Origin: Selaginella moellendorffii
Lineage: Eukaryota; Plantae; Lycopodiophyta
Length of the DNA: 64,000 nucleotides
NCBI RefSeq assembly: GCF_000143415.4
Contig: NW_003314321.1
Location: forward strand, 1,182,422 to 1,246,421
Direction: 5' to 3'
Part shown: piece after piece, positions 9,601-64,000 of the stretch
Numbering within the stretch: position 1 is the stretch's first letter
How the letters are laid out: every line of letters begins with the position of its first letter
Program-made: the position numbers and the translations under genes
The notes under the pieces: generated by a model
Seen by the model: the letters and a program-made list of their open reading frames with translations, nothing else
Database searches by the model: none
Told to the model about the DNA's origin: nothing

Positions 9601-9869
9601 GGTTAACATTAGTCAAAGGGAAGTGTGAGACACAAAATCCCTAGGCCCCAAAGTGGAGCCGAAAGAGTGCCACATGGTAGTGGCTGAAGTGAAAGCTAAA
9701 CGAGCGTAACACGTTTGGAATAAAAGTTTCGACTTGAAAGGTCGAGAGTGGGAGTGGAACACCTAACAAGGGCTCAAGGAACGAGCACAAATTGAGCAAT
9801 AAGCGAGGCTCCAAAAAAGACCAAAAGGACCAACACATGACACGTGGAAGTGTCCGAGAAGGAGTCCAA

Positions 9870-10380
9870 GATGGATCCGAGATAGATCCAAGATGGAGTA
9901 CAAGATAGACCCGAGATGGAGTCTGAGATGAAATCCAAAATGGAATCCGAGATGGAGTCCGAGATGGAGTCCGAGATGGAGTCTGAGATGGACTCGAGAT
10001 GGAGTTCGAGATGGACCCGAGATGGAGTCCAAGATGGACTCGAGTTGGAGTCTGAGATGGACCTAAGATGGAGTCTGAGATGGAGTCTAAGATGGACCTG
10101 AGATAGAGTCCGAGATGGACCCGAGATGGAGTCCAAGATGGACCCGAGATGGAGTCTGAGATAGACCCGACAATAGAGTCCAAGATGGAGTCCGAGATGG
10201 ACTCGAGATGGAGTTCNNNNNNNNNNNNNNNNNNNNNNNNNNNNNNNNNNNNNNNNNNNNNNNNNNNNNNNNNNNNNNNNNNNNNNNNNNNNNNNNNNNN
10301 NNNNNNNNNNNNNNNNAGATGGAGTCTGAGACGGAGTCCGAGATGGAGTTCGAGAAGGACTCGAAATGGAGTTCGAGGTT
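9870..10380. repeat. Degenerate 12-bp tandem array (GAGATGGAGTCC)n inside the LTR; contains the 100-N assembly gap at 10217-10316
   Basis: Directly visible. Equivalent arrays lie at ~15890-16190 and ~17570-17940. Confidence 0.95.
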
Positions 10381-11626: not shown

Positions 11627-11638
11627 TGGTATCAGAGC
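11627..11638 (+). promoter_or_regulatory. Primer-binding site, tRNA-iMet
   Basis: TGGTATCAGAGC, 3 nt after the LTR-terminal CA. Confidence 0.9.
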
Positions 11639-14065: not shown

Positions 14066-14244
14066 CGCACTTTAACTATAAGTTAGTGCACTAGCGTGGG
14101 GAGTAACGCCAGGCATCTTGGATGATGCCTTCCGTAGATGCATATACGGAGGTTGGGTTCGAGTCCCAACCCTCTAGTGCTTGGGTTTGAGTCTCAACTC
14201 ACTAGGGTGTGGTGATAGTTTAAAATATGAGGACACTCATTTTT
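14066..14244 (+). ncRNA. Structured cis RNA element with T-loop hairpin(s), homologous to 33490-33700
   Basis: Hairpins aggcatc/gatgcct, ccgta/tacgg, ggttggg-TTCGAGT-cccaacc, ctctagtg/cactaggg and atgag-GACA-ctcat occur in the same order as in the chromovirus 3' UTR. Confidence 0.7.
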
Positions 14245-17200
14245 CAGTGGTCATGGACTCTCAGTAAGGAGATTCGCTTAGGTACACCACCAAACGAGGG
14301 ATGCCCTGGAGTTGTGATGCACGGTTAAATTGTTTAGTGTGGCTCAACATATCTAACTTGAACACTTTGGTGTGAGTGGCACCAAGGATGTTGTGAATGA
14401 GATGGAGACACCTAGTCTTAGTTGCTATGGACCCTTAGCCGGAAGGGCTGGCTTGGGTGCACTGCCAAGTGTGGGGGATGCCCTTGGGGTCATAGTGAAC
14501 AACTTAAAAATCTGGAGGACTTAGTATCTATTGGCAAGCCTGTTATAGATCACAAGGTGATCTTATGGCCAAAAACAAGAACAAGATCTTTATGAGGTAA
14601 AAGGGATAAAATTCCTAATTTAAAGTGTTGATTTGAACTATAATGATGGTGTGGCTTGGTCAAGGTGACCAAGTGGGAAGAACACCTAAGGGAAATGATC
14701 TGTGACAATGCAATGGTATAGGGAGTCCAAAGAAAGTAGTCTCTATAAGAGACCTATGGGAAGGTCCCAAAGTTAGGCCAGGGATAGAGCCCACAGTAGA
14801 AAATGCTAAAGAGACGTACTAGGGGTGAACACCTTCTAGACTTGGCAAAGCAAAGTCTTTGCTATGGAATTGAAATGATACCTCGAGAATGGAGGTAGAG
14901 ATCCAATATTGCTAGGTGCAACAATCAAGGATAGGAGCAAAAGACTAATGGCTAAGAAAAGAGCCACGGGAATCATGGGAAATAATCCAAAAGGGCGAAG
15001 TTAGGCCAAGAACACTAATGTGTTGAGCACTAACGAATTGTGGGAAAGGCAATGTGTTTCCAAAGATGGATTCCCAATTGCTCCGATTTGGTAAAAGCAG
15101 AAGCTCCAATGCAGGGAGCGGTAAGGTAGCCAAATAATAGGGCTATGGACAGCCTTAGCAATAATTATGATAATTGGAACTTAGTGCCCAAGATGGCACG
15201 AAATAGAAGAAAGGATGATAGTGCCCTCAAGTAGAGAATTTCCTAGGATGGGGAAGTGGAGTTGCACAATATGTGCAATGCAAGGTGTCGGAGACACCTA
15301 GGAAATTGACTGCAAGAAGTCAAAAGTAAAAGTTCCAAAGTGCAAAGGTTATATTGATGGAAATTAAGACTACTCGAGAAGGAGTAGTGGGATTGAGATA
15401 GAGACGGTGTCTCTAACAGGTTTAGCGAGAACTAAACCAATAAAAGGAGAGAACCACCACAAGTGGCCCAATTAGTTTCTAAGTTGGAGAGACTATCCTC
15501 CTTAGAGGATGGGCAAGGCATGGTGAGCCTTCAGTATTAAACCATTAATGAATATTGGCGAGGTGCCAAAAATGGAAAGGGTAATATATGTTAGTAATAC
15601 TTTATAAAATAGTTTATCGTTCGATGAAGACATCGAACTTTGTCTATGGGTGGTGGAGTTGTGAGACACAAAATCCATAGGCCCCAAAGTGGAGCCGAAA
15701 GGGTGCCATGTGGTAGTGGCCAAAGCGAAAGCCAAACGAACGTAACACGTTTGGATTAAAAGCTTCGACTTGAAGGGTTGAGAGCGGGAGTGGAACTCCC
15801 AATAAGGGCTCGAGGAACGAGCACGAAGCGAGCAATAAGCAAAGCTCTAAAAAGGGACCCAAAAGGACCAACACATGACACGTGGAAGTGTTCGAGATAG
15901 AGTCTGAGATGGAGTCTAAGATGGAGTCCAAGATGGACCCGAGATGGAGTCTGAGATGGACCCGAGATGGAGTCCGAGATGGACTGAGATGGAGTCCGAT
16001 ATGGACCTGAGTTAGAGTCTGAGATGGACCTGAGATGGAATCCGAGATGGAGTCCGAGATGGACCTGAGATGGAGTCCGAGATGGACCCGAGATGGAGTC
16101 TGAGATGGAGTCCGAGATGGAACCGAAACTGAAACCGAGACCGAGACCGAGTCTGAGTCCGAAACCGGGATCGAGACCGAGTCCGAGTCTGAATACTAAT
16201 ATAGGCAATTAGGTGAAATCCCAAAGCAATCGTCCCCCGGGGGGGCTGCAGGGGGTTCCAAAAGTATAGTAGGGAGAGTGTGGGGGTTGGAGCTTAGTGG
16301 AGCCAATTTGGCCAGGAAAGGCCAGTTTGGCCCAGGAAGGCCATACCCAGTGTTGGGTGATGAGTTGACCACTGGGAAGTCCAAAACTAGAGTGAATACA
16401 GACTGATAAGTGGGGTAGCTTGGTGAAGTGTTCAAGAGCCAGCTCTAGTTCCCCCGGGAAATCAAATGGTCGATGCTCCTAGTCCAAGTGTGGGTGGCAC
16501 TACCTACTTGGATACCTGGCGTGGCTCAATGGAACCTCGCTCTAAGCCCATGGCTAAAGCACCCAAAGGTGGAAGGCGGGGAGAGTACCCATGAGGCTCG
16601 TGTAGGGCCATGGTGTTCTAAAATGTTATCCCAAAGGCCCAAACGGTGGAAAGGAAGAGGAGTACCACCCCCGAACTACCTCAAAGCTCCACTATGCTGC
16701 CATAAGCCTTAAAATAGGTTAAGTTCTTTACCTTAACATGCCTTAAGATACCCTTGAGCTTCCTATAAACGACTAAATTTTCCATTATACTTTAGTCACT
16801 TAACCACACCTCTGACCATTTGGAAGAGTCTCACTCACAACCTCCATAAGTTCTATTTTGGATTTAGGGACTTGTTAGCCCCAAGAATGGCATCCAAGCC
16901 ACTCAACCATCGCACTTGGTCCAAGTGCTCCACGTGTCCAATCCCATGACCGACACCCCAAGGTACCATCGACATATCAACCTATTACGCTAAGGCCATG
17001 CCCATTCACCTTGGTCACACCGGTGGTTTGACACCACCTACATCACAATCCTGTCTCTCAAAGACTAGGCCATCTGTCCATGAGTGATCATCCTAGTCCT
17101 CTAGTGTAGTGACCAAGGATACAGTTGTGTGGTGAGGAAGTCCCATAGGACCATGGGACTTAGTGATCGGGCCTGTGGGCCTCGATCCAGTGGCAGTGTT

Positions 17201-17334
17201 AGCGAACACGGCCATGGGCAAAAAAGGACATGGTGGGGACTGGAAAAGGGATATTGGGGAAGGCTATTCCCCATGTCTACGGGCATCCTAAGGATTGGGT
17301 GGTGAGGTAGCGTAATGTAATTTCGGGAGACTAG

Positions 17335-17785
17335 TGTGAGACACAAAATCCCTAGGCCCCAAAGTGGAGCCGGAAGGGCGCCACGTGGTAGTGGCCGAAA
17401 CAAAAGCCAAACGAGTGTAACACATTTGGACTAGAAGCTCCGCCTTGAAAGGTCGAGAGCGGGAGTGGAACTCCCAACAAAGTGCTCGAGGAATGAGCAC
17501 GAAGCGAGAAATAAGCAAGGCTCTAAAAAGGGACTCAAAAGGACCAACACATGACATGTGGAAGTGTTCGAGATGAAGTTTGAGATGGACCGAGACGGAG
17601 TCCGAGATGGAGTCCGAGATGGACCTGAGATGGAGTCCGAGATGAAGTCCGAGATGGACCGAGACGGAGTCCAAGATGGAGTCTGAGATGGAATCCGAGA
17701 TGGAGTCCGAGAAGGAGCCGAGATGGAGTCCGAGGTCATGACTGAGACCGGGACCGAGACCGAGACCGAGACCAAGACCGAGACT

Positions 17786-17819
<34 letters not shown>

Positions 17820-18930
17820 TCGGGACCGAGACCGAGACCGAGGCCAAGGCCGAGACCAAGCCCGAGCCCAAGTCCGAGTCCGAGTCCGAGTCTGAGTCCA
17901 AGTCTGAGTCCGAGTCTGAGTCTGAGTTCGAGTTAGAGTCTGAGAGGGTGAAAGCCCAAAGCGTTCGTCTCCCAGACCCTAGGGGGTTTGGTGAGCTCTA
18001 AAAGTATAGTAAGGGGGAGGATTGTAGTGGAGCCAGTTTGGCTAGGAAAGGCCAGTTTGGCCCAGGAAGGCTGTACCTAGTGTTGGGTGATGAGCTGCCC
18101 ACTGGGAAGTCCAAGATTAGAGTGAACACAGACCGACAAGCGGGGTAGCTTAGTGAAGTGTTCAAGTGCCGGCTTTAGTTCCCCCGGGAGATCAACTGGC
18201 CAATGCTCATAATCCAAGTGTGGGTGGCACTACCTACTTGGATACTAGGCGTGGCTCAACGGAACCTCGCTCTCAGCCCATGGCTAGAGCACCCAAAGGC
18301 GGAAGGCGGGGAGAGTACCCACGAGGCTTGCGTAAGGCCACGGTGTTCCGAAATGTTGTCCCGAAGGCCTAGACTGTGGAAAGGAAGAGGAGTAGTCCTC
18401 TGGTGTAGTGACCAAGGATACAGTCGTGTGGTGAGGAAGTCCCAGAGGACCGTGGGACTTAGTGGTTGGGCCTGTAGGCCTTGATCCAGTGGCAGTGTTG
18501 GCGAACTCGGCCAAGGACAGAAAGGGACTTGGTGGGGACCAGAAAGGAGATATTGGGGAAGGCTATTCCCCATGTCTGCGGGCATCCTAAGGATGCTAAG
18601 GAGTGGATCTGGGATGACCACTCATGGACGGATGGCCCAGTCTTGGAGAGACGGGATTGCAATGCAGGTGGTGTTGGACCACTGATGTAACCAAGGTGAT
18701 AGGGCATGGCCTAGCGTAATAGGCTGGTATGTTGGTGGTGCCTTGGGGTGTCGGTCATGGGACCAAACACCTGGAGCACTTGGACCAAGTGCAAAGGTTG
18801 AGTGGCATGGATGCTATTCTTGGGGCTAGCAAGCCCCAAGTCCTTATGGAGGTTGTGAATGAGACTCCTCTAAGTGGTCGGAGGTGTGGTTAAGTGACTA
18901 AAGTAGAATAGAAAAAATTAATCGCTTACA
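17335..18930 (+). mobile_element. Solo LTR, same family as 9624-11623
   Basis: TGTGAG...CTTACA flanked by 5-bp TSD ACTAG (17330-17334 and 18931-18935). Confidence 0.93.
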
Positions 18931-31351: not shown

Positions 31352-33004
31352 TGTCAAGACCCCCAACAAGATCAAGACTGGAACATGCAGAAGACAGAGA
31401 GAAAAGCTAGTGGAAATGAAGAAAAAACCTTAGACTGGCGTTGATTCAGATTGTGGAGAAATGGAACAAAGCTAACTATATATACTATAGGTTGATGAAG
31501 CTCCACCACTCTTGGATCGAGGACGGCCTAAATATAGCTAAGGTCGAGGAGGCGCCATATCATCACCAGGAATGTGGCTCGAGACTCAGGAATCGTATGG
31601 GAAATCAGAGAGTCAAGAATAGAGAAGTGTCTCGAGAGTTAGGAATGTGGTTTGCAGGTCAAGAATCCGGCGAGAGTCAGGAATGTGGCAAGAATTAAGG
31701 GATTCCTAACAGCACCCCCTCCTCAAGAATGAGTGGAATGAGGACGTGAATGAGAATGAAGAGGAGGATGACATGGGTGGCGAGAGACGGGAGATGGAAA
31801 AAAAGAAGGAAGACTGGGATGAGAAGGATAACGGTGGTGGAAGTCTTGAACAAGGTCAGGAGAATGAATCAGGTTGTTTGTAGGTTCCCAAGTGCGTTCT
31901 TCAAGTCCATAACCCTTCCAGTCAACTAAATAGTAGAGTTTAGACCGTGAGATCTTGGAATCAAGGATGTCCTAAACCTTGTACTCAGACCCATCCTTGA
32001 GCTGCACTGGTGGAGGCGAAGGAATGACCCGATTTGGAATAAGACTGGGAATATAAAGCTCAAGGAGAGAGGAGTGAAAAACGAGGTGAATTTGATATGA
32101 GGAGGGAAGTGCAAGGTGATAAGTGATAGGATTAATGATGGCAATGATAAGGAAAGGACTGAGGCGTTTGAAATCGAGTTTGGGACATGGCCTAGTGGTG
32201 GAGATATTTCTGTAAGCCACAATTTTTCCTTTCCAATTTGCCAGCTTACCTCGTCTATCCGTCCAACACTGCCTTGGCTTTTGCTAAGTTCCCTTGCCAA
32301 GGTTCTCGCCTATGGTACCAGCCCCTACTTGGTTTCAGCTACTCACTGCACGAGCAACGGAGTGTTAGCCATCCTTCCACGGATTCCCAAATCACTCCCA
32401 ATCCCCCTCCCCGGGTTAGACTGGACTTAAGGTTCGGCTACACTCCCCGCAAGCACAAGCAGCCAAGCACACCAAGCTTCCAGATTCCTAACATCCCTTG
32501 GTACCACAAGACTTGATCATGGGACCCTCTAAATCCCAAGTCTTGAGTGCAACACTTGCTTCGGGACGCCGGGGCGAAACACCGTGGCCTAACGGCCCGG
32601 TATGGGTACCCCTCGCCCCCCACATCCATCCCGAAGGAAGGCCCAAGCCCCTAGGAAGGGCGAGGACCAATGAGCCGCATGGTACTCAAGTGGGGCACCA
32701 CTCCACATGAGCCGGGAGCACCGCAATCGGTTTCCCTTTCGGGAGTGGGAGCTGCTCTTGAGCACTTCCTTGGATGGCCCCTCCGGCACCAGCCAAGTCC
32801 ATGCTCACTCCCACCCAAGGCCCCTTAGTCCCAGTCCCAACCTCAAGTCGGTTTGGAAGCCCAACTGGAGAGTCCCTTCAAAACTGGTTCCTGGACCTCA
32901 CTATCCCTACTATACTTTTGGAACCCCCTGCAGCCCCCCCCCCCTGGGGGACGCACGCTTTGGGCTTTCACCCCTTGACCCGTATTAGTATTTGGACTTA
33001 GTCT

Positions 33005-33262
33005 CTGGCTCGATCTCGGATCCGATTTCGGATCCGACTTCGGATTCGGTCTCGGACTCGATCGCGGACTCGATCTCGGACCCGATCTCGGGCCCGACCT
33101 CGGACTCGACTTCGGACTCGGTCTCGGACCCGATTTCGGATCTCGGACTCCGTCTCGAACTCGGTCTCGAACTCGGACTCGAACTCGGTCCCCGAGTCGG
33201 TCTTGGACTCGATTCCGGACTCTATCTCGAACTCGGTCCTAGAGTCGGTCTTGGACTCGATC
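33005..33262. repeat. Degenerate hexamer array (CTCGGA/CTCGAT)n in the LTR; also at 39386-39643
   Basis: Directly visible in both LTRs. Confidence 0.93.
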
Positions 33263-33489
33263 TTTGACTTGGTCCCATCCGATGAACTCTTTGTCATTTT
33301 GGTCATGCTTTCGGGGTTCCCTTAGCCTACGACACCTCGGCGAGTTGGTTCCTTACAACTCCACCACCCATAGAAGAAGTTCGATGCCCACATCGAACGT
33401 CTCTTTTTTATCCTACGACTTGTTGACCATGTCTCCGGGGGCATCCCCCCACTTAGCGGTGTGCCTAAGTTAGCCTCCCCGGCCAAGAG

Positions 33490-33700
33490 CTCATGACAAC
33501 GGAATATAGGTGTCCCTATACTCCACCCCTCACCACGCCCTAGTATGGGGTCGGGACTTGAACCCAGCCTTGCTTTACTAGGGGGTTGGGACTCGAACCC
33601 AACCTCCGTAGAATACGTCTACGGTTTCGACATCCCCGCAGGGAGTCGGGCGTAGCTCCCTACGCCTGGTCGACCTAGCTAACCCATGCTAATTAGCTCA
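33490..33700 (-). ncRNA. Multi-hairpin structured 3' UTR element with two tRNA T-loop (box B-like) hairpins
   Basis: On the minus strand, in order: ggcgtag/ctacgcc, cgactccc/gggatgtcg, ccgtaga/tctacgg, ggttggg-TTCGAGT-cccaacc, ccctagta...tactaggg enclosing ggg-TTCAAGT-ccc, then ggagtatagg-GACA-cctatattcc. Confidence 0.72.
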
Positions 33701-33761
33701 CCTTTGGCGCGCCTTCGGGTCCCAACATATGCCACTTGCTCAACTTTGCAAATTGATATTT

Positions 33762-36700
33762 TTAATTGAACTTTGCATAAGTACATAGAGTTCTGCCTTG
33801 CAGAAATTCCTCCACTAGATCTCGCGCGTTCGCTAGGTTCTCCTCCGGTTCCCATGTTGCTTCGCAGTGTGGAAATCCTTTCCACTTCACATGGAACTCT
33901 CTCACCTCGCGTCCTTGTCGCTTGCTCTTGCGCGCATTGAGGATGGCCTCGACTTCGTATTCCTCTTCCCCTTGGATAACCTCAGGTAAAGGTCTTACTT
34001 GGTCTTTGCGAAGCGGATCCTCAAAGTACGGCTTGAGTAAGTTCACATGGAACACTGGGTGCATCTTCCCCATCTCTCGAGGAAGTCGGAGTCGGTAAGC
34101 CACTTTACCGATTCGTGCCTCAATCTCGTAAGGCCCCGCGAACCTGCTCAAGGAACTCAAGATCAATTCATTTACAGGAATACATGCATTTTTACCTTTG
34201 GGTCAACTTTCGGCTGATCCCACTTGGTAGCCTAAGGTTCTTGGTGTTCAGCCACACCTTCTCCCCAGCTTGGAACTCTACGTCCCGGCGCTTTAGGTTC
34301 GCGTACTTGGTTTGCCTTTGTTGAGCCCGTTCCAAGGAATCCCTCACTAGATTCCAAATGTTGAGTCTTTCCGCCGTGAATGCCTCCACGGCGGGTAACT
34401 CTCCATGATACTCGGCCACGCCAAGTTCCACAGGACCTTCAATAGCTCGCCCATTGATGACTTCCCATGGACTCACCCCGATACTCGAATGTGGTGAGTT
34501 GTTATAACACATTTCCGCAAGTCCCAAATGACTTACCCAATCGGTCTGGTCTCCCGAGACATAGCATCGCAAATAATCCTCCAGCTGCCTATTCACCCTT
34601 TCCGTTTGTCCGTCTGTCAAGAAGTGTTAGGACCACCAAACTTGACTTAATACCCCATACCTGTCTGTGGGTGATAGGCTGTGCTGAATTTCAACTTGGT
34701 GCGATACTGTTCCAGGAGGGTCCTCCAGAACCTACTAGTGAAGATCTTATCTCGGTCTGAGATAATCTCCTCTGGCCTTCCCCGCACTCGAACCACTTGT
34801 TCGAAGAACAGTTTCGCCACACCTTCCGCATCCACCTCCGTTGTGGTGGGTATGAAATGTGCCATCTTCGAAAATCGGTCCACCACCACGAATATCGCAT
34901 CGAACCCCTCGCTTGGGGGTAGTCCCGTGATGAAGTCCATCGTGAGACATTTCCACGGACGATCTGGAATGGGGATGCTTTGCAACAAGCCCCCACTAGC
35001 CTTAGTCACGGCTTTGACCTGCTGACATGTTGGACATGTCTTTACATAGTCTTGGACGTCCTTAGCCATATCTGGCCAATGGTACTTCCTCTTGAGTAAG
35101 CCCATCGTCTTGGGCACTCCGCCGTGTCCCGCAAGAGGTCCGTCATGACACTCTTCTAAGGCTACCTTCCTTAGTCCACCTTCTGGAACATACACCCTCG
35201 TTTGCTTGTAATAAATGAGTCCATTGCGTTCCGCATAGCCCGTTTTCTCTTCCGTTGGCGGCTCACCTCTCTGGTGAGCTTCCCGTGCCTCCAGATTCCT
35301 CAACAACACTTCTTGTGCTAGACCATCGTTCTCATATGCTGTCCGCACATCGTCCCAGAAGGTTGCTGTTGCGCTGGAGATCGCCAACCTCAAGCTCGCT
35401 TTTCGACTTAGCGCATCTGCCACGATGTTGCTCTTCCCAGGCTTGTACAGAATCTCGCAATCAAACTCGGCCAAGGCATTGGCCCACCGACCTTGTTTCC
35501 CTCTCAGGTCGGGTTGTGACAAGAAGTGTTTCGTTGCCACATTGTCCGTGTAAACCTTGAAGTGTCTCCCAAGGTAGTGTCGCCACTCCTTGAGCGCCTT
35601 GACCACCGCAAACAATTCCTTCTCGTGGGCAGGCCACTTCCGTTGAGCCTTGTCCAGCTTCTTCGAGAAGAACGCTACTGGATGGTTGTCTTGCTTCAAA
35701 ACTGCGCCTAACGCAAAGTCCGAAGCATCCGTGTCTACCTCAAAGTCCTTACCAAAGTCCGGTAATGCCAACACCGGAGCCTTCCTCAACTTCCCTTTGA
35801 GGTGGACGAATGCCGCCTCGCATTCCGCTGTCCATACCATCTTCCCTTTTCCCGTTTGATCCGTTAAGGGTAGGGCTACTCTCGAATAGTGTCTGATAAA
35901 CTTTCGATAGTAGTTGCATAGCCCCAAGAACGCCCTCAACTCATGTACATTCGATGGTCGCTCCCATTCCTGGATCGCTTGGACCTTCTCCGGGTCCACC
36001 TTGAGCCCATCCTGGCCCACCACATGCCCGAGAAACTTTACCTCTTGCTGAGCAAAGTCACATTTGCTCTCTTTAGCATACAGTTTATGTTCCCTTAGTT
36101 TCTCAAACACCTTCGCCAAGTGTTCGGCATGCTCCTCTAGCGTCTCGCTATAGATCAGGATGTCGTCAATATAGACGACCACAAAGTGATCCAGATAGGG
36201 TACAAAGACGTGGTTCATCAACGCCGAAAACGTTGCCGGCGCATTGCACAGCCCAAAGGGCATCACCAAAAACTCAAAGCTCCCATACCTCGTTCGACAG
36301 GTTGTCTTCTCGACGTCTTCCTCGGCTACCCTGATCTGGTAGTATCCTGACCTTAGGTCAATCCTCGAGAAGTATTTTGCCTTTCCCAACCTATCGAACA
36401 GGTCCTCAATCCTTGGCAACGGGTACTTGTTCTTCTTGGTATACTTGTTGAGCAACCGGTAATCTATGCACATGCGCATAGATCCATCTTTCTTTTTCAC
36501 AAATAATACCGGCGCCCCATACGGCGACTTGCTCAACCTCACATACCCTTTGCCCACCAACTCCTCTAGTTGGCACTTGAGCTCCTTGAGTTCTTTTTCG
36601 TTCAAACGATAGGGGGGACGAACCACCGCCTCAGCGCCCTCGACAAGCTCAATCTTATGTTCTATCGGTCGTGCGGGGGGCAACCCCGCCGGTAGCTCCT

Positions 36701-38534
36701 CCGGCATGGTATCCTGGAATTGGTCCAACACTCGCTGGATCACTAAAGGCACTTCTTCCGTTCTTGTCTTTTTGTCACTCTTCACCGAGAGTAAGCACAA
36801 AAAGGCTGCCTTAGTTCCTTTAGTGAGTTGTCCTCTCGTGGACACCAGGTTCAAGCATGACTCTTTGGCCTTGCTTTGCCCTACCTTTAGATCCTGGGCC
36901 TCCACCCTAGATCTTCTTCCTTGGGCATTCGCCAATACCACAAGGTTCCTACCTTGTCCATGCAGGGCTACCACGAACCGATTAAACCAATCCATTCCGA
37001 AGATCACGTCAAATCCCGCCATATCCAAGACGGTGAAATCCATGTCCACTTTCCATGTCCCCACTTCGACTCTCGCTTGTCGAAGTACCTCATCGGTGCT
37101 TTGGCTACCCTGAACAAACTCTATAGTCCTTGGTTCGCCTAGCCGCTGCACCGTTAGTCCGGCTTGCCGGACTATGTCTGCAGCCACAAAATTATCCGAA
37201 GCACCCGTGTCAATAAGGATCTTAACAAAGCTACCTCCGAGCTTCCCTCGGAGGGCTAGTAGATGTCGCGAACGACTCTCTACCAAAGTTGCTCGTGTAA
37301 TGAGTAACTTTGAGTTAGGGACTGGATCACATACCTCAGTTTGGACTTCACCCCACTTGATGGCCATATTGGCTCTGGCCTTCTTCGGGTAGGGACATTC
37401 CCTCGAGAAGTGTCCCGCTTCGCCGCAGTTGTAGCATACGTTGTTTCCCACGCTGCTATACGACTTGACCTTCTTATCCGTGGGTTTGTCCTTTTTCGCT
37501 TGACTCCCCCACGTACTCGCTCGCTGGCCACCGGATTTGCCTTTCCGGAACCCCGAGGACTCATTCTTAGAGAAACTCCTTTTGAATTTCCCCTTGCTAT
37601 ACGTTCCCCTTGGTTTGGCCCCTTTGCTAAATGTGGATCCCGACCCCGTCGTGTTCCCCTTTCGCAGGTTATCGTTGAAATGCACCTTGATGGCCGCATC
37701 CAACGCTTCCTTGTAGTTGGTCGGGTTCCACCTCATCACCTCGCCGCGAGCCCAGGTTTGCAAACCTGATATGAAGGCATGGAACGCATCCATATCCCCC
37801 ATGTCCGTGACAAGTATCCTCTTTGCCATGAACCCATTCACATATTCCTGGATGGTTCCTGTCTGTTTCAGCCTACTCAGTTCATCCCTCAGATGCAGAG
37901 TGGCATTCGGAGGAACATATGTTGCGCGGATCCTCGCCTTCATCATGTCCCAAGTGACCACCGGTCCTTCGTTGGCCTCCGTTGTTCTCCACCAAGACTT
38001 GGCATTATCTGCCAAGTATGGTTTTGCACATGGGACCTTCTCCGAGCTTGGTAACCGCAACGCTCGGAAGTAGTCCTCCATATCGTAAAACCAATCCTCC
38101 ACCACCTTATAGTCATTCACTCCCTTGAAGACCGGTGGGGGCTTTGGTTTGTACTTGGGAACTACCTGAGGGACTGATTCCACTTCGGTCTGTTCGACCT
38201 TGTCTGGTTTTGCCTCAGTCCCGGCCGAAAGATCCGCACCTTCTGCGCTGCCAGCATCCGCAGTCTTTTTCTTTTTCTTCCGCCTCTCGTCACGCTTTAG
38301 CTTGCGTACGAGAGTTTCCAGCAGGGCATTGGTCTGTGCCAACTGTCCTTCTAGCACGTCCAATCGAGCCTTGGACGACCGAACCTCGCCACCGGACTCC
38401 TGTTTGGAGGTTTCCTCACTGGAGTCCTCCTCATGCAAGGATTCCTCATCCATAGCCTCTTGTTCGACCGGAGGCTCCAGCTCTGGCGGAGGTTCCGTCT
38501 CCGCTTGGGTTCGCTTACGCCCTGCCCTTGCCAT
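33762..38534 (-). CDS. Gag-Pol polyprotein (Gag, CCHC knuckle, protease, RT, RNase H, integrase, chromodomain); 3 exons 38534-34661, 34613-34196, 34143-33762, 1557 aa if spliced
   Basis: Motifs [28 protein letters not shown], the integrase HHCC zinc finger, MDFI, SDRD and YEVEAIL...VKWKG..EATWEP. Removing two GT-AG introns restores HPQT|DGQTE and KLTQR|FAGPY in frame. Confidence 0.93.
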
Positions 38535-40586
38535 CTCCCAGCAATCCGCCTCTATCCTTCGCTAGAACTGAGGAAAAGGCTCCGATACCAAATTGTAAGC
38601 CACAATTTTTCCTTTCCAATTTGCCAGCTTACCTCGTCTATCCGTCCAACACTGCCTTGGCTTTTGCTAAGTTCCCTTGCCAAGGTTCTCGCCTATGGTA
38701 CCAGCCCCTACTTGGTTTCAGCTACTCACTGCACGAGCAACGGAGTGTTAGCCATCCTTCCACGGATTCCCAAATCACTCCCAATCCCCCTCCCCGGGTT
38801 AGACTGGACTTAAGGTTCGGCTACACTCCCCGCAAGCACAAGCAGCCAAGCACACCAAGCTTCCAGGTTCCTAACATCCCTTGGTACCACAAGACTTGAT
38901 CATGGGACCCTCTAAATCCCAAGTCTTGAGTGCAACACTTGCTTCGGGACGCCGGGGCGAAACACCGTGGCCTAACGGCCCGGTATGGGTACCTCTCGCT
39001 CCCCACTTCCATCCCGAAGGAAGGCCCAAGCCCCTTGGAAGGGCGAGGACCAATGAGCCGCATGGTACTCAAGTGGGGCACCACTCCACATGAGCCGGGA
39101 GCACCGCAATCGGTTTCCCTTTCGGGAGTGGGAGCTGCTCTTGAGCACTTCCTTGGATGGCCCCTCCGGCACCAGCCAAGTCCATGCTCACTCCCACCCA
39201 AGGCCCCTTAGTCCCAGTCCCAACCTCAAGTCGGTTTGGAAGCCCAACTGGAGAGTCCCTTCAAAACTGGTTCCTGGACCTCACTATCCCTACTATACTT
39301 TTGGAACCCCCTGCAGCCCCCCCCCTGGGGGACGCACGCTTTGGGCTTTCACCCCTTGACCCGTATTAGTATTTGGACTTAGTCTCTGGCTCGATCTCGG
39401 ATCCGATTTCGGATCCGACTTCGGATTCGGTCTCGGACTCGATCGCGGACTCGATCTCGGACCCGATCTCGGGCCCGACCTCGGACTCGACTTCGGACTC
39501 GGTCTCGGACCCGATTTCGGATCTCGGACTCCGTCTCGAACTCGGTCTCGAACTCGGACTCGAACTCGGTCCCCGAGTCGGTCTCGGACTCGATTCCGGA
39601 CTCGATCTCGAACTCGGTCCTAGAGTCGGTCTTGGACTCGATCTTTGACTTGGTCCCATCCGATGAACTCTTTGTCATTTTGGTCATGCTTTCGGGGTTC
39701 CCTTAGCCTACGACACCTCGGCGAGTTGGTTCCTTACAATTTCGCCTGAGGAGCCAAACTTTATCCCCAATATTGTAAGAGGGACAATCCTGACGATGGA
39801 CATTGGCAAATGTTTTGTGAGATTCCTAAGCACGATGGAGGTGGAAGGAGATGGAGTTGTGGATTTCCTGGAGGTTGGAGACAAATGCCTCAGAGCGGGG
39901 ATTTGAACGAGAGGATTTAGATAGAGAAAGAAGTGAGAGATTGAATCAAGGATTTTGGCCAGAGTTCGCAAAGAAGGGGGAAACTCGAAGAGAGGAGTGA
40001 ATAGAGTTGTTATAGGAGAACTCAGCAAGGGAAAGGATATCGAACCAATCATCCTGATGATAGTTGATGAAACACCTCAAGAATTGTTCCAACGTCTAAA
40101 TCGTTTGCTCAGATTGTCCATCAGTTTGAGGATGATATGCCGAAGAGAGGTTGGCCTTCACTCCAAGTAGCTACAAGAACCATTGCCAGAAATGAGAGAT
40201 GAACTAAGGTCCCTAATCCGAAACCACATCTGCAAGAATCCCATGAAGTCGGAAAATTTCCTTGAATACCAGTTTTGCCATACCCTCGCCTGAAAACTCC
40301 TTGGTACACGACAGGAAGTGCACCATCTTTGTGAAGCGATCCACCATGACTAAAATGCTATTGAAGCCTCTAGAACTCAGAAGATCACTCAAGAAATCCA
40401 TGGAGATGGATTCCTAACGACCTGAAGGGACCGGGAGGGAACAAAGCAAAGGTGGCGAGGTACCTTATTTCGGGCGCAAGTATCATAGGAGGTAACAAAA
40501 ACTTTGATGTAATCGTCCATGCGGGAATCGGCAGTCGGGAGTCACTGGGTGTCCATGGTGGAAAATGTCACTGGCGAGGTCATCGG

Positions 40587-57932: not shown

Positions 57933-60900
57933 TCCGGTTCCCATGTTGCTTCGCAGTGTGGAAATCCTTTCCACTTCACATGGAACTCTCTCACCTCGCG
58001 TCCTTGTCGCTTGCTCTTGCGCGCATTGAGGATGGCCTCGACTTCGTATTCCTCCTCCCCTTGGATAACCTCAGGTAAAGGTCTTACTTGGTCCTTGCGA
58101 AGCGGATCCTCAAAATACGGCTTGAGTAAGTTCACGTGGAACACGGGATGCATCTTCCCCATCTCTCGAGGAAGTCGGAGACGGTAAGCCACTTTACCGA
58201 TTCGAGCCTCAATCTCGTAAGGCCCCGCGAACCTGCTTAAGGAACTCAAGATCAATTCATTTACAGGAATACATGCATTTTTACCTTTGGGTCAACTTCC
58301 GGCTGATCCCACTTGGTAGCCTGAGGTTCTTGGTGTTCAGCCACACCTTCTCCCCAGCTTGGAACTCCACATCTCGACGCTTTTGGTTCGCGTACTTAGT
58401 TTGCCTTTGTTGAGCCCGTTCCAAGGAATCCCTCACTAGATTCCAAATGTTGAGTCTTTCCGCCGTGAATGCCTCCACTGCGGGTAACTCTCCATGATAC
58501 TCGGCCACGCCGAGTTCCACAGGACCTTCAATAGCTCGCCCATTGATGACTTCCCATGGACTCACCCCGATGCTCGAATGTGGTGAGTTGTTATAACACA
58601 TTTCCGCAAGTCCCAAATGACTTACCCAGTCAGTCTGGTCTCCTGAGACATAGCATCGCAAATAATCCTCCAGCTGCCTATTCACCCTTTCCGTTTGTCC
58701 GTCTGTCAAGAAGTGTTAGTGCCATCAATCTTGACTCAATACCCATTACCTGTCTGTGGGTGATAGGCCGTGCTGAATTTCAACTTGGTGCGATACTGTT
58801 CTAGGAGTGTCCTCCAGAACCTACTGGTGAAGATCTTATCTCGATCTGAGATAATCTCTTCCGGCCTTCCCCGCACTCGAACCACTTGTTCGAAGAACAG
58901 CTTCGCCACACCTTCCGCATCCACATCCGTTGTGGTGGGTATGAAATGTGCCATCTTTGAAAATCGGTCCACCACCACGAATATCGCATCGAACCCCTCG
59001 CTTGGGGGTAGTCCCGTGATGAAGTCCATCGTGAGACATTTCCACGGACGATCTGGAATGGGGATGCTTTGCAACAAGCCCCCACTAGCCTTCGTCACGG
59101 CTTTGACCTGCTGACATGTTGGACATGTCTTTACATAGTCTTGGACGTCCTTAGCCATATCTGGCCAGTGATACTTCCTTTTGAGTAAGCCTATCGTCTT
59201 GGGCACTCCGCCGTGTCCCGCAAGAGGTCCGTCATGACACTCTTCCAAGGCTACTTTCCTTAGTTCCCCTTCTGGAACATACACCCTCGTTTGCTTGTAA
59301 TATATGAGTCCGTTGCGTTCCGCATAGCCCGTTTTCTCTTCCGTTGGCAACTCACCTCTCTGGTGAGCTTCCCGCGCCTCCAGATTCCTCAGCAACACTT
59401 CTTGTGCTAGACCATCACTCTCGTATGCGGTCCGCACATCGTCCCAAAAGGTTGCTGTCGCGCTAGATATCGCCAACTTCAAGCTCGCTTTTCGACTTAG
59501 CGCATCTGCCACGATGTTGCTCTTCCCAGGCTTGTACAGGATCTCGCAATCAAACTCGGCCAAAGCATTGGCCCACCGACCTTGTTTTCCCCTTAGGTCG
59601 GGCTGTGACAAGAAGTGTTTCGTTGCCACATTGTCCGTGTAAACCTTGAAGTGTCTCCCAAGGTAGTGTCGCCACTCCTTGAGCGCCTTGACCACCGCAA
59701 ACAATTCCTTCTCGTGGGCAGGCCACTTCCGTTGAGCCTTGTCCAGCTTCTTCGAGAAGAACGCTACTGGATGGTTGTCTTGCTTCAAAACTGCGCCCAA
59801 CGCAAAGTCCGAAGCATCCGTGTCTACCTCAAAGTCCTTACCAAAGTCTGGTAATGCCAACACTGGAGCCTTCCTCAACTTCCCTTTGAGGTGGACGAAT
59901 GCCGCCTCGCATTCCGCTGTCCATACCATCTTCCCTTTTCCTGTTTGGTCCGTTAAGGGCAGGGCTACTCTCGAATAGTGTCTGATAAACTTTCGATAGT
60001 AGTTGCATAGCCCCAGGAACGCCCTCAACTCATGTACATTCGATGGTCGTTCCCATTCCTGGATCGCTTGGACCTTCTCCGGGTCCACCTTGAGCCCGTC
60101 CTGGCCCACCACATGCCCGAGAAACTTTACCTCTTGTTGAGCAAAGTCACATTTGCTCTCTTTAGCATACAGTTTGTGTTCCCTTAGTTTCTCAAACACC
60201 TTCGCCAAGTGTTCGGCATGCTCCTCTAGCGTCTCGCTATAGATCAGGATGTCGTCAATATAGACGACCACGAAGCGATCCAGATAGGGTACAAAGATGT
60301 GGTTCATCAACGCCGAAAACGTTGCCGGCGCATTGCACAGCCCAAAGGGCATCACCAAAAACTCAAAGCTCCCATACCTCGTTCGACAGGTTGTCTTCTC
60401 GACATCTTCCTCAGCTACCCTGATCTGGTAGTATCCTGACCTTAGGTCAATCCTCGAGAAGTATTTTGCCTTTCCCAACCTATCGAACAGGTCCTCGATC
60501 CTTGGCAAAGGGTACTTGTTCTTCTTGGTATACTTGTTGAGCAACCGGTAGTCTATGCACATGCGCATAGATCCATCTTTCTTTTTCACAAATAGCACCG
60601 GCGCCCCATACGGCGACTTGCTCAACCTAACATACCCTTTGTCCACCAACTCCTCTAGTTGGCTCTTGAGCTCCTTGAGTTCTTTTTCGTTCAATCGATA
60701 GGGTGGACGAACCACCGCCTCAGCACCCTCGACCAGCTCAATCTTATGTTCTATCGGTCGTGCGGGGGGCAACCCTGCCGGTAGCTCCTCCGGCATCGTA
60801 TCCTGGAATTGGTCCAGCACCTGCTGGATCACTAAAGGTACTTCTTCCGTTCTTGTCTTTTTGTCACTCTTCACCGAGAGTAAGCACAAAAAGGCTGCCT

Positions 60901-62077
60901 TAGTTCCTTTAGTGAGTTGTCCTCTCGTGGACACCAGGTTTAAGCATGACTCTTTGGCCTTGCTTTGCCCTACCTTTAGATCCTGGGCCTCCACCCTAGA
61001 TCTTCTTCCTTGGGCATTCGCCAATACCACAAGGTTCCTACCTTGTCCATGTAGGGCTACCACGAACCGATTAAACCAATCCATTCCGAAGATCACGTCA
61101 AATCCCGCCATATCCAAGACGGTGAAATCCATGTCCACTTTCCATGTCCCCACTTCGACTCTCGCTTGTCGAAGTACCTCATCGGTGCTTTGGCTACCTT
61201 GAACAAACTCTATAGTCCTTGGTTCGCCTAGCCGCTGCACCGTTAGTCCGGCTTGCCGGACTATGTCTGCAGCCACAAAATTATCCGAAGCACCCGTGTC
61301 AATAAGGATCTTAACAAAGCTACCTCCGAGCTTCCCTCGAAGGGCTAGTAGATGTCGCGAACGACTCTCTACCAAAGTTGCTCGTGTAATGAGTAACTTT
61401 GAGTTAGGGACTGGATCACATACCTCAGTTTGGACTTCACCCGACTTGATGGCCATATTGGCTCTGGCCTTCTTCGGGTAGGGACATTCCCTCGAGAAGT
61501 GTCCCGCTTCGCCGCAGTTGTAGCATACGTTGTTGCCCACGCTGCTATACGACTTGACCTTCTTATCCGTGGGTTTGTCTTTTTTCGCTTGACTTCCCCA
61601 CGTACTCGCTCGCTGGCCACCGGATTTGCCTTTCCGGAACCCCGAGGACTCATTCTTAGAGAAACTCTTCTTGAATTTCCCCTTGCTATATGTTCCCCTC
61701 GGTTTGGCCCCTTTGTGAAACGTGGATCCCGACCCCGTCGTGTTTCCCTTTCGCAGATTATCGTTGAAATGCACCTTGATGGCCGCATCCAACGCTTCCT
61801 TGTAGTTGGTCGGGTTCCAGCGCATCACCTCACCGCGAGCCCAGGTTTGCAAACCTGATATAAAGGCATGGAACGCATCCATATCTCCCATGTCCGTGAC
61901 AAGTATCCTCTTTGCCATGAACCCATTCACATATTCCTGGATGGTTCCAGTTTGCTTCAGCCTACTCAACTCATCTCTCAGATGCAGAGTGGCATTCGGA
62001 GGAACGTATGTCGCGCGGATCCTCGCCTTCATCATGTCCCAGGTGGCCACCGGTCCTTCGTTGGCCTCCGTTGTTCT
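57933..62077 (-). mobile_element. Second, LTR-less copy of the intron-containing chromovirus (partial gag to partial chromodomain); introns at 58749-58703 and 58284-58233
   Basis: Colinear with 33844-37988 at an offset of 24089. ORFs 58736-62086, 58281-58709 and 57920-58255. Confidence 0.95.
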
Positions 62078-62381: not shown

Positions 62382-62405
62382 GATTGACCCCTTGACCCGT
62401 ATTAG

Positions 62406-64000
62406 TCCAAATACTAATACGGGTCAAGGGGTGAAAGCCCAAAGCGTGCGTCCCCCAGGGGGGGGGGGCTGCAGGGGGTTCCAAAAGTATAGTAGGGATA
62501 GTGAGGTCCAGGAACCAGTTTAGAAGGGACTCTCCAGTGGGGCTCCCAAACTGACTTGAGGTTGGGACTGGGACCGAGGGGCCTTGGGTGGGAGTGAGCA
62601 TGGACTTGGTTGGTGCTGGAGGGGCCATCCAAGGAAGTGCTCAAGAGCAGCTCCCACTCCCAAAAGGGAAACTGATTGCGGTGCTCCCGGCTCATGTGGA
62701 GTGGTGCCCCACTTGAGTACCATGCGGCTCATTGGTCCTCGCCCTTCCTAGGGGCTTGGGCCTTCCTTCGGGATGGAAGTGGGGGGCGAGAGATACCCAT
62801 GCCGGGCCGTTAGGCCACGGTGTTTCGCCCCGGCGTCCCGAAGCAAGTGTTGCACTCAAGACTTGGGATTTAGAGGGTCCCATGAACAAGTCTTGTGGTA
62901 CCAAGGGAAGTTAGGAACCTGGAAGCTTGGTGTGCTTGGCTGCTTGTGCTTGCGGGGAGTGTAGCCGAACCTTAAGTCCAGTCTAACCCGGGGAGGGGGA
63001 TTGGGAGTGATTTGGGAATCCGTGGAAGGATGGCTAACACTCCGTTGCTCGTGCAGTGAGTAGCTGAAACCAAGTAGGAGCTGGTACCATAGGCGAGAAC
63101 CTTGGCAAGGGAACTTAGCAAAAGCCAAGGCAGTGTTGGACGGATAGACGAGGTAAGCTGGCAAATTGGAAAGGAAAAATTTGTGGCTTACAATTTGGTA
63201 TCGGAGCCTTTATCTCAGTTCTAGCGAAGGATAGAGGCGGATTGCTGGGAGATGGCAAGGGCAGGGTGTAAGCGAACCCAGGCGGAGACGGAACCTCCGC
63301 CGGAGCTGGAGCCTCCGGTTGAACAAGAGGCTATGGATGAGGAATCCTTGCATGAGGAGGACTCCAGTGAGGAAACTTCCAAACAGGAGTCCGGTGGCGA
63401 GGTTCGGTCGTCCAAGGCTCGATTGGACGTGCTAGAAGGACAGTTGGCACAGACTAATGCCCTGCTGGAGACTCTCGTACGCAAGTTAAAGCGTGACGAG
63501 AAGCGGAAGAAAAAGCGAAAGACTGCGGATGCTGGCAGCGCAGAAGGTGCGGACCCTTCGGCAGGGACTGAGGCAAAACCAGACAAGGTCGAACAGACCG
63601 AAGTGGAATCAGTCCCTCAGGCAGTTCCCAAGTACAAACCAAAGCCCCCACCGGTGTTCAAGGGAGTGAACGACTATAAGGTTGTGGAGGATTGGTTTTA
63701 CGATATGGAGGACTACTTCCGAGCGTTGCGGTTACCGAGCTCGGAGAAGGTCCCATGTGCAAAACCATACTTGGCAGATAATGCCAAGTCTTGGTGGAGA
63801 ACAACGGAGGCCAACGAAGGACCGGTGGCCACCTGGGACATGATGAAGGCGAGGATCCGCGCGACATACGTTCCTCCGAATGCCACTCTGCATCTGAGAG
63901 ATGAGTTGAGTAGGCTGAAGCAAACTAGAACCATCCAGGAATATGTGAATGGGTTCATGGCAAAGAGGATACTTGTCACGGACATGGGGGATATGGATGC
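62406..64000 (+). mobile_element. Third copy of the chromovirus: partial 5' LTR (to 63192), PBS 63196-63208, gag from ATG 63252 running off the window
   Basis: Reverse complement of ~37785-39378. Translation [20 protein letters not shown]... Confidence 0.95.

What the first reader, a model, noticed from the sequence alone, without database searches (positions are those of the whole stretch)
34144..34660. LTR retrotransposon whose integrase is split by two spliceosomal introns
Seen: the 1295-aa gag-pol ORF stops just after HPQTG. Removing 34660-34614 (47 nt; GTATGG...CTAAC...TTGACAG) restores HPQT-DGQTE. Removing 34195-34144 (52 nt; GTAAAA...GAGCAG) restores KLTQR-FAGPY and attaches the chromodomain, giving 1557 aa. 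The element is young (LTRs ~99% identical, intact TSD) and copy 2 has both introns, so they survive replication. The older host chromovirus has uninterrupted YHPQTDGQSE. Established: retrotransposition of spliced RNA purges introns; the splicing cases I know involve Gag/Pol ratio or the Ogre PR-RT spacer, not the DDE core. Inference: unspliced genomic RNA encodes an integrase lacking its catalytic Glu, GPY/F motif and chromodomain, so active integrase must come from a spliced mRNA that is not copied. This would be a splicing-controlled integration switch.
Basis: partly seen in the sequence, partly recalled or inferred. Interest (0 to 1): 0.93.

Follow-up and report, generated by a model that had tools for sequence, protein, structure and literature searches.

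The report
Retrotransposon integrase split by real introns
A young, very abundant jumping gene of the spikemoss Selaginella (the published SM1-Galahad family) carries four true host-type introns, two of them inside its integrase, which RNA-type assemblies show cut out exactly while the DNA copies keep them, so a complete integrase can be made only from spliced RNA although new copies must be made from unspliced RNA.

Summary
A minus-strand Ty3/gypsy chromovirus lies at 32211-39739 (LTRs 99.2% identical, TSD ATTTC). Its 1295-codon gag-pol frame stops four codons into a 47-nt GT..AG insert (34660-34614). A second 52-nt GT..AG insert (34195-34144) separates the rest of the integrase core from the SH3-like and chromo domains.

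One RNA-type assembly (X15) lacks both inserts exactly. It also lacks a 157-nt intron over the protease active site, which would leave a Gag-only message, and a 65-nt leader intron that removes the LTR end and the primer-binding site. A second assembly (X17) keeps integrase intron 1 and the leader intron but shows the protease splice.

All copies in the window keep their introns. In a DNA run the 15 best-supported joints include no intron-less form. Of 22 differences between copies 1 and 2 in the downstream exons, 21 are third-codon positions in the splice-dependent frames.

The family is the published SM1-Galahad, described in 2012 as lacking an intact copy and having three ORFs; that paper does not mention introns. 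This scan has already reported the same family and reading on many other pieces of this genome. The "switch" idea is supported in outline. That the leader intron stops spliced RNA from being copied is inference.

The parts
38594..39739 (-). 5' LTR (1146 nt, TG..CA). RNA-type contigs end at 39270/39267, just downstream of TATAGTAGGG (39297-39288), which is the likely transcription start.
32211..33358 (-). 3' LTR (1148 nt), 99.2% identical to the 5' LTR
39740..39744 (.). Target-site duplication ATTTC; its twin is at 32206-32210
38568..38632 (-). Leader intron, 65 nt, GAG|GTAAGC..TTTTCCTCAG|. It contains the last 39 nt of the 5' LTR, a 3-nt spacer and the whole primer-binding site. It is absent from X15 record 11 and kept in X17 record 20.
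38578..38590 (-). Primer-binding site TGGTATCGGAGCC (tRNA-Met type, as published for SM1-Galahad); lies inside the leader intron
   Evidence: PMC3350952
34647..38534 (-). Unspliced gag-pol frame, 1295 aa: gag, CCHC, PR, RT, RNase H, H2C2, and the integrase core up to HPQT. It stops inside integrase intron 1.
37178..37334 (-). Protease intron, 157 nt, GAG|GTATGT..GCTGCAG|, phase 0 after codon 400. It holds the PR active site (ILIDTGAS). After the junction the frame reads ACA TAG, so the spliced message would encode a 401-aa Gag only. Absent from X15 record 10 and from X17 record 18.
34614..34660 (-). Integrase intron 1, 47 nt, CAG|GTATGG..CTAAC..GACAG|, phase 1, four codons upstream of the DD35E Glu. 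If retained it gives GMGY then stop.
34196..34613 (-). Exon 2: the rest of the integrase core (GQTE Glu) and the first part of the SH3-like domain
34144..34195 (-). Integrase intron 2, 52 nt, AAG|GTAAAA..GAGCAG|, phase 2, inside the SH3_Tf2-1 domain. If retained it gives R then stop.
33762..34143 (-). Exon 3 coding part: the GPY/F-SH3 remainder and the chromodomain, with the stop at 33764-33762
33359..33372 (-). Polypurine tract region (GGGTGGTGGAG) next to the 3' LTR
57933..62077 (-). Copy 2 (partial, 96.7% identical, no gaps). It keeps integrase intron 2 (58233-58284), integrase intron 1 (58703-58749) and the protease intron (61267-61423).
62404..64000 (+). Copy 3: the 5' part of another copy, running off the window end. 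It keeps the leader intron with the PBS (63153-63218, 66 nt).

Best explanation
This is a young copy of the Selaginella moellendorffii chromovirus family SM1-Galahad. The family carries four U2-type GT-AG introns that are maintained through retrotransposition. Unspliced RNA keeps the LTR end and the primer-binding site. It is therefore the form that can be reverse-transcribed, and it encodes Gag-PR-RT-RNase H plus an integrase cut off before its catalytic Glu. Host splicing gives three further outcomes. (i) Removing the two integrase introns yields a frame that continues through the DD35E Glu, the SH3-like (GPY/F) domain and the chromodomain. (ii) Removing the protease intron yields a Gag-only message that stops one codon after the junction. 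(iii) Removing the leader intron yields an RNA without the U5 end and the primer-binding site. Shown here: the introns are absent exactly in RNA-type assemblies, they are retained in all DNA copies seen, and there is purifying selection on the downstream exons. Inferred: active integrase is supplied in trans from spliced messages. Also inferred: spliced RNAs are kept out of the replication cycle because the strongest splice donor, in the leader, removes the primer-binding site, which would explain why the introns are never lost.
For: Exact GT..AG borders and restored motifs. X15 record 9 (2500 nt) lies on 36413-34661, 34613-34194 and 34141-33815 without a break. X15 records 10 and 11 skip 37178-37334 and 38568-38632. 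X17 record 18 carries the protease splice, with its loose end matching 37337-37364 at 25/28. X17 records 13 and 20 keep integrase intron 1 and the leader intron, so both spliced and unspliced forms exist. X15 and X17 look like RNA: the assemblies total 26 and 37 Mb, and their contigs end at 39270/39267 inside the LTR. In DNA run X1 the summed depth is about 1e6, and the 15 best-supported joints (depth 186-650) include no intron-less joint. X1 contigs enter intron 1 in the copy-2 variant (loose end at 34630). Copies 1, 2 and 3 all keep their introns. Between copies 1 and 2, differences by codon position (1st/2nd/3rd) are 10/11/84 in exon 1, 0/1/13 in exon 2 and 0/0/8 in exon 3. The interior of intron 1 differs at 7 of 47 sites while GT, CTAAC and AG are kept. 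The integrase introns are AT/T-richer than the exons (GC 0.35-0.43 against 0.52). The published SM1-Galahad has the same 1295-aa ORF plus two short ORFs, the last with a chromodomain, and 'no intact copy' (PMC3350952).
Against: X15 and X17 are only guessed to be RNA by the tool. The one certain raw RNA run (X22) gave 47 reads and no junction reads. Contigs cannot show which introns are removed on the same molecule. A message with the protease intron kept and the integrase introns removed, which a full Gag-Pol would need, was therefore not seen directly. X17 shows the protease splice alongside a retained leader, so coupling of the leader splice to the other splices is unproven. 67 further joints in the table were not displayed, so a rare intron-less DNA copy cannot be excluded. 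No protein or transposition data exist.
Confidence: 0.8

Rival explanations
1. The inserts are inactivating insertions fixed in a non-autonomous subfamily. That subfamily would be mobilised in trans by an intact relative such as SM2-Galahad, whose 1577-aa frame is uninterrupted. The GT..AG ends would be incidental and the downstream exons unused.
For: The 2012 paper found no intact SM1-Galahad copy and an intact sister family in the same genome. No junction reads were found in the raw RNA run X22.
Against: Four separate segments all have GT..AG ends. They are removed exactly in an RNA-type contig. 21 of 22 differences in exons 2-3 are third-codon positions in the spliced frames (binomial p about 1e-9), which would not happen in unused sequence. 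Insert lengths are identical between copies 3.3% apart.
Confidence: 0.05
2. The intron-less contigs of X15 come from DNA, either rare processed intron-less copies of the element or contamination, rather than from RNA.
For: The tool labels X15 as 'RNA? (a guess: may be DNA)'.
Against: The X15 assembly totals only 26 Mb. Its coverage stops at 39270 inside the LTR, next to a TATA-like motif. The DNA run X1 shows no such joint above depth 186 out of about 8e5. Even an intron-less DNA copy would itself be the product of splicing followed by reverse transcription.
Confidence: 0.07
3. The introns are real and are spliced, but splicing is constitutive housekeeping rather than a control point. The element simply tolerates introns. 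Their persistence would be due to packaging or export signals in unspliced RNA, as in retroviruses, and not to removal of the primer-binding site.
For: X17 shows the protease splice together with a retained leader, so leader splicing is not obligatory for every spliced RNA. Retroviruses exclude spliced RNA mainly through a packaging signal that lies in the intron (established knowledge).
Against: The leader intron has the best donor (GAG|GTAAGC) and does remove the primer-binding site and U5 end. X15 and X17 differ in which integrase-intron form dominates, which hints at variable splicing.
Confidence: 0.3

Closest known systems
SM1-Galahad, Selaginella moellendorffii chromovirus (Novikov, Smyshlyaev and Novikova 2012, PMC3350952)
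   Same: About 7.5 kb, LTRs over 1 kb with TG..CA ends and poly-G tracts, tRNA-Met PBS of 13 nt. One ORF of 3885 bp (1295 aa) with CCHC-PR-RT-RNase H-core integrase, followed by two short ORFs, the last holding a group I chromodomain. Hundreds of copies about 95% alike. The window element fits every point.
   Different: The paper treats the element as lacking an intact copy and as having three ORFs. The word 'intron' does not occur in it. Here the ORF breaks are shown to be spliced GT-AG introns, and two further introns are found. I could not compare with the published sequence letter by letter because it is not held.
SM2-Galahad (sister family, same paper)
   Same: Same clade (Galadriel-like with a group I chromodomain), same host, tRNA-Met PBS, similar length.
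   Different: A single uninterrupted 1577-aa Gag-Pol that includes the integrase core and chromodomain. The integrase introns are therefore specific to the SM1 lineage, or were lost in SM2.
Ogre (Tat lineage Ty3/gypsy of legumes), an intron between the gag-PR and RT-RH-IN frames
   Same: A plant LTR retrotransposon that keeps an intron in its DNA copies. The intron is spliced from only part of the transcripts, and splicing is needed to translate the full polyprotein (PMC6317226; PMC12786077).
   Different: Ogre has one longer spacer intron between domains. Here there are four very short introns. Two lie inside the integrase (one four codons before the catalytic Glu, one inside the SH3-like domain), one lies over the protease active site, and one excises the primer-binding site. 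The lineage is also different (chromovirus).
shGAG splicing of Ty1/copia elements (EVADE, BARE1, Drosophila copia; Oberlin et al. 2017, PMC5580714)
   Same: The protease intron works on paper exactly like this. It removes the protease, and a stop follows shortly after the junction, giving a message dedicated to Gag (one search compared).
   Different: Those elements are Ty1/copia. In Arabidopsis, Ty3/gypsy elements showed no such conserved splicing. Those elements also have no introns in the integrase and none that removes the PBS.
Retroviral splicing control (own knowledge)
   Same: Unspliced RNA serves as the genome, and spliced RNAs act as messages that are not propagated.
   Different: The retroviral major donor lies downstream of the PBS, and spliced RNAs are excluded through loss of the packaging signal. 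Retroviral pol is translated from unspliced RNA. Here part of pol needs splicing, and the leader intron takes out the PBS itself.

Membership tests
Ty3/gypsy chromovirus (Metaviridae) | LTRs with TG..CA ends, a 5-bp target-site duplication, and a PBS and PPT next to the LTRs | tested here: met
Ty3/gypsy chromovirus (Metaviridae) | Domain order gag-PR-RT-RNase H-IN with a C-terminal chromodomain | tested here: met
   Pfam: RVP_2, RVT_1, RT_RNaseH, Integrase_H2C2 and rve in exon 1; SH3_Tf2-1 and Chromo in exon 3
SM1-Galahad family | 1295-aa first ORF, two short downstream ORFs with the chromodomain in the last, LTRs over 1 kb, tRNA-Met PBS of 13 nt | tested here: met
   against the description in PMC3350952
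SM1-Galahad family | Nucleotide identity to the published reconstruction | not testable with these tools
   The published sequence is not held in any collection I could search
U2-type spliceosomal intron | GT..AG ends with host-like donor context; interior richer in A/T than the exons | tested here: met
   all four have GT..AG; integrase introns have GC 0.35-0.43 against 0.52 in exon 1; CTAAC lies 17 nt before the AG of integrase intron 1
U2-type spliceosomal intron | Exact absence from RNA while present in genomic DNA | tested here: met
   X15 records 9-11 and X17 record 18 lack them; window copies 1-3 and X1 DNA contigs keep them. Caveat: X15 and X17 are RNA by inference, and the raw RNA run X22 was too thin.
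U2-type spliceosomal intron | Removal restores a conserved, selected reading frame | tested here: met
   HPQT-D-GQTE and KLTQ-R-FAGPY are restored; 21 of 22 differences in exons 2-3 are at third positions
Ogre-type intron-bearing LTR retrotransposon | A single intron in the spacer between the gag-PR and RT-RH-IN frames; Tat/Ogre lineage | tested here: not met
   The introns lie in the leader, the protease and the integrase. The element is a chromovirus.
shGAG-type alternative splicing | An intron spanning the protease whose removal puts a stop shortly after the junction | tested here: met
   phase 0 after codon 400, then ACA TAG; the splice is seen in X15 and X17
shGAG-type alternative splicing | Ty1/copia superfamily; premature termination coupled to splicing | tested here: not met
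   The element is Ty3/gypsy. Termination could not be tested.

The most novel reading that the evidence does not exclude
SM1-Galahad has handed three separate control points of its life cycle to the host spliceosome. The protease intron would set the Gag:Pol ratio, the two integrase introns would set integrase competence, and the PBS-excising leader intron would decide which RNAs can serve as template. If so, spliced RNAs are by design dead ends for replication, and the introns can persist indefinitely in an element that copies itself through RNA. That would be a self-protecting intron architecture not described for any retroelement. It would also be a natural case of intron gain inside a retrotransposon, since the sister family SM2-Galahad lacks the integrase introns.
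Probability: 0.4. Interest if true: 0.88.

Novelty: new variant of a known kind. Interest (0 to 1): 0.78.

Why it matters
Retrotransposition normally purges introns, and that fact is the classic proof that these elements move through RNA. A 2025 review names only Ogre and EVADE as plant LTR retrotransposons with functional introns (PMC12786077).

Here a family with hundreds of copies keeps four introns. Two of them make its own integrase depend on host splicing, and one removes the primer-binding site. This makes several questions directly testable:
- How does a retroelement sort template RNA from message RNA?
- Why do intron-less revertants not take over?
- How were introns gained inside a mobile element?

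It also corrects the published view that SM1-Galahad has no intact copy. TE annotation pipelines that demand one open frame will misclassify such elements as dead.

Tried and rejected
- **Close protein relatives.** The aim was to see whether related families have introns at the same codons. The search for homologous proteins on the end of exon 1 gave only hits of 55% identity or less, mostly Closterium and seed plants. The same search with exon 2 gave nothing.
- **Exhaustive representative search.** With exon 2 as query it gave hits of 40-50% identity only. Several hits start their match at residue 11. A Met in the common motif [10 protein letters not shown] would explain this (recalled motif, hit sequences not inspected), so I did not count it as intron evidence. 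Depth of conservation therefore could not be tested.
- **Raw RNA run X22.** Only 47 reads were laid, most on an LTR segment with unlike sequence on both sides, and there were no junction reads.
- **Loose end at 38768.** It is not a splice: there is no GT there, and the sequence is not found elsewhere in the window.
- **Introner-like repeats.** A short blast of the four introns against the window found only the other copies of the element.
- **Bacterial promoter/terminator scan of the LTR.** It is irrelevant for a plant element.
- **Papers not held.** The Selaginella genome paper and the 2008 Ogre splicing paper were not available.
- **What I did not build.** The exons were searched separately, and the 1557-aa length is arithmetic.
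Full report
**The element.** The window holds a complete minus-strand LTR retrotransposon at 32211-39739.
- The LTRs are 32211-33358 and 38594-39739. They are 99.2% identical and end in TG..CA.
- The 5-bp duplication ATTTC flanks both sides.
- A tRNA-Met-type primer-binding site TGGTATCGGAGCC lies at 38590-38578, three bases from the 5' LTR. A purine tract lies next to the 3' LTR.
- The element sits inside an older, decayed chromovirus whose integrase reads AYHPQTDGQSE without a break at about 40134.
- Earlier notes of this scan name the genome as Selaginella moellendorffii. The element fits the published description of SM1-Galahad point by point: about 7.5 kb, LTRs over 1 kb with poly-G tracts, a 13-nt tRNA-Met PBS, a 3885-bp ORF of 1295 aa, and two short downstream ORFs with a group I chromodomain in the last. 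That paper reports no intact copy and never uses the word intron (PMC3350952).

**The observation.** Searches confirm it exactly.
- The 1295-codon frame (38534-34647) ends AYHPQT, then GMGY and a stop.
- The 47 nt at 34660-34614 begin GTATGG, contain CTAAC 17 nt before the end, and end GACAG. They sit in phase 1.
- Past them the split codon reads D, followed by GQTERVN. The Glu there is 35 residues after the second Asp, so it is the DD35E Glu.
- The 52 nt at 34195-34144 begin GTAAAA and end GAGCAG, in phase 2. Past them the split codon reads R, followed by FAGPYEIE.
- If either insert is retained, a stop follows within four codons (intron 1) or one codon (intron 2).
- Pfam places gag, CCHC, PR, RT, RNase H, H2C2 and rve in exon 1. 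Only profile positions 24-63 of the SH3_Tf2-1 domain, plus the chromodomain, fall in exon 3, so intron 2 splits that domain.
The 1557-aa total is arithmetic.

**RNA and DNA evidence.** No indexed holder was on record as RNA. I laid one raw RNA run (X22), two transcriptome-sized Logan assemblies from different studies (X15 at 26 Mb, X17 at 37 Mb), and one genome-sized DNA assembly (X1 at 210 Mb).
- **X15.** Record 9 (2500 nt, depth 11) lies on 36413-34661, 34613-34194 and 34141-33815 with no letters between. It lacks exactly the 47 and 52 nt; a 2-nt GT ambiguity at intron 2 is the only slack. Record 10 skips 37178-37334. Record 11 skips 38568-38632.
- **The two extra segments.** Both are GT..AG.
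  - The 157-nt segment (GAG|GTATGT..GCTGCAG|) starts after codon 400, contains the protease active site ILIDTGAS, and is followed by ACA TAG. Its removal would give a 401-aa Gag-only message.
  - The 65-nt segment (GAG|GTAAGC..TTTTCCTCAG|) contains the last 39 nt of the 5' LTR, the spacer and the whole primer-binding site.
- **X17.** This assembly comes from a different study. Record 13 runs through integrase intron 1 unspliced and record 20 runs through the leader unspliced. The 28-nt loose end of record 18 matches 37337-37364 at 25/28, which is the protease splice.
- **Are X15 and X17 RNA?** Both assemblies stop at 39270/39267, about 20 nt downstream of TATAGTAGGG. DNA would not stop there. 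Together with their size and the splices, this makes RNA the sensible reading, although the tool only guesses it.
- **X22.** Only 47 reads were laid, too few for junctions.
- **X1 (DNA).** The summed depth is about 1e6. The 15 best-supported joints (depth 186-650) are unrelated rearrangements and none is an intron-less joint. The joints appear to be listed by depth, since X15's own joints at depth 11 were not displayed. If so, any intron-less DNA form lies below roughly 0.03% of the family signal. A single such locus cannot be excluded.
- **Intron 1 in DNA.** X1 contigs enter intron 1 and branch at 34630 into TGCCATCAA, which is the intron variant of copy 2. So at least two intron haplotypes are present in the DNA run.

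**Evolutionary evidence within the window.**
- Copy 2 (57933-62077) aligns to copy 1 without a single gap, with 136 differences in 4145 nt. It keeps both integrase introns and the protease intron.
- A third partial copy on the plus strand (62404-64000) keeps the leader intron with its PBS.
- Differences between copies 1 and 2, by codon position:

| Region | 1st | 2nd | 3rd |
|---|---|---|---|
| Exon 1 | 10 | 11 | 84 |
| Exon 2 | 0 | 1 | 13 |
| Exon 3 | 0 | 0 | 8 |

- Exons 2 and 3 are counted in the frames that only splicing connects to exon 1. With 21 of 22 differences at third positions, the binomial p is about 1e-9.
- The family-wide variants listed show the same pattern.
- The two lineages therefore diverged while the whole integrase and the chromodomain were under selection, and they carried the introns along. 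Exon 2 has no Met before residue 34, so it cannot supply the catalytic Glu as a separate ORF.
- The interior of intron 1 differs at 7 of 47 sites, while GT, CTAAC and AG are unchanged.
- The integrase introns are richer in A/T than the exons.

**How it most likely works.**
- **Shown:** there are four real introns, both spliced and unspliced forms exist in RNA-type assemblies, the DNA copies keep the introns, and the downstream exons are selected.
- **Inferred:**
  - Unspliced RNA is the template. It yields Gag-PR-RT-RNase H with a dead-ended integrase.
  - Messages with the protease intron kept and the integrase introns removed supply complete Gag-Pol in trans.
  - Protease-spliced messages raise the Gag supply. 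This is the strategy known from Ty1/copia elements such as EVADE (PMC5580714), which that study did not find in Arabidopsis Ty3/gypsy elements.
  - The leader intron has the best donor of the four (GTAAGC, against GTATGT, GTATGG and GTAAAA). It removes the primer-binding site and the U5 end, so such RNAs cannot prime minus-strand synthesis. This is a simple reason why the introns are never lost.
- **Weak point:** contigs cannot show which splices share a molecule, and X17 shows the protease splice beside a retained leader. The sister family SM2-Galahad has one uninterrupted 1577-aa frame, so an intron-less design is viable. Why no intron-less SM1 revertant spreads remains the open question.

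**Comparison and novelty.**
- A 2025 review states that plant LTR retrotransposons generally lack introns, with Ogre and EVADE as the exceptions (PMC12786077).
- The large plant survey mentions only the Ogre intron, and notes that some S. moellendorffii chromoviruses behave oddly in trees (PMC6317226).
- Full-text searches for introns in the integrase of an LTR retrotransposon found nothing.
- So the family is known, but the intron reading, the integrase position, and the PBS-excising leader intron appear undescribed in the library I could search. I class it as a new variant of a known kind (intron-bearing LTR retrotransposons).
- Within this scan it is not new. At least ten notes on other pieces of the same genome report the same family and reading, some with RNA support and with the leader and protease introns. 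I re-derived all of this independently on this window.

**Limits.**
- There are no raw junction-spanning reads.
- There is no genome-wide census.
- No close relatives were found in the protein libraries, so the age and spread of the introns are unknown.

Noticed in passing
window 37178-37334 (-): A 157-nt GT..AG intron covers the protease active site. Its removal, seen in X15 and X17, puts a stop one codon after the junction. This is a Ty1/copia-style Gag-only (shGAG) splice in a Ty3/gypsy chromovirus.
   Followed up: yes
window 38568-38632 (-); copy 3 at 63153-63218 (+): The leader intron excises the last 39 nt of the 5' LTR and the whole tRNA-Met primer-binding site. It is spliced in X15 and retained in X17.
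   Followed up: yes
window 39267-39300 (-): RNA-type contigs from two studies end at 39270/39267, about 20 nt downstream of TATAGTAGGG, which is the likely transcription start. Another note of this scan (s1-405199) likens this start region to the rDNA promoter; I did not test that.
   Followed up: partly
window 38768-39124: In raw RNA run X22 almost all reads lie on this 357-nt LTR segment, on one strand, with unlike sequence on both sides (loose ends at 38768, 39001 and 39124). It looks like an LTR fragment inside some other transcript or a divergent LTR subfamily. It is not a splice, since there is no GT at the break.
   Followed up: partly
window 39305-39628 and 32924-33247: The U3 part of the LTR holds 12-nt-periodic tandem repeats, and there is a poly-G/C tract near 39320. 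The 2012 paper notes such tracts vary in length between copies.
   Followed up: no
window 62078-62403: Between copy 2 and copy 3 lies the end of a different LTR (..GGAGCTTACA) followed by TT and a tRNA-Met PBS TGGTATCAGAG. Another LTR element is nested here.
   Followed up: no
window 39740-40450 and 31840-32210 (-): The host of the insertion is an older chromovirus with several in-frame stops. Its integrase is uninterrupted at the position of intron 1, and its chromodomain lies on the other side of the insertion.
   Followed up: partly
window 10217-10316: A run of 100 N (assembly gap) lies inside a region of 23-nt and 12-nt tandem repeats that belongs to another LTR family (9600-18800).
   Followed up: no
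window 34144-34195 vs 58233-58284: Integrase intron 2 differs at only 1 of 52 sites between copies, whereas third codon positions differ at about 8% and intron 1 at 15%. This may reflect constraint on intron 2, but the sample is too small to say.
   Followed up: no
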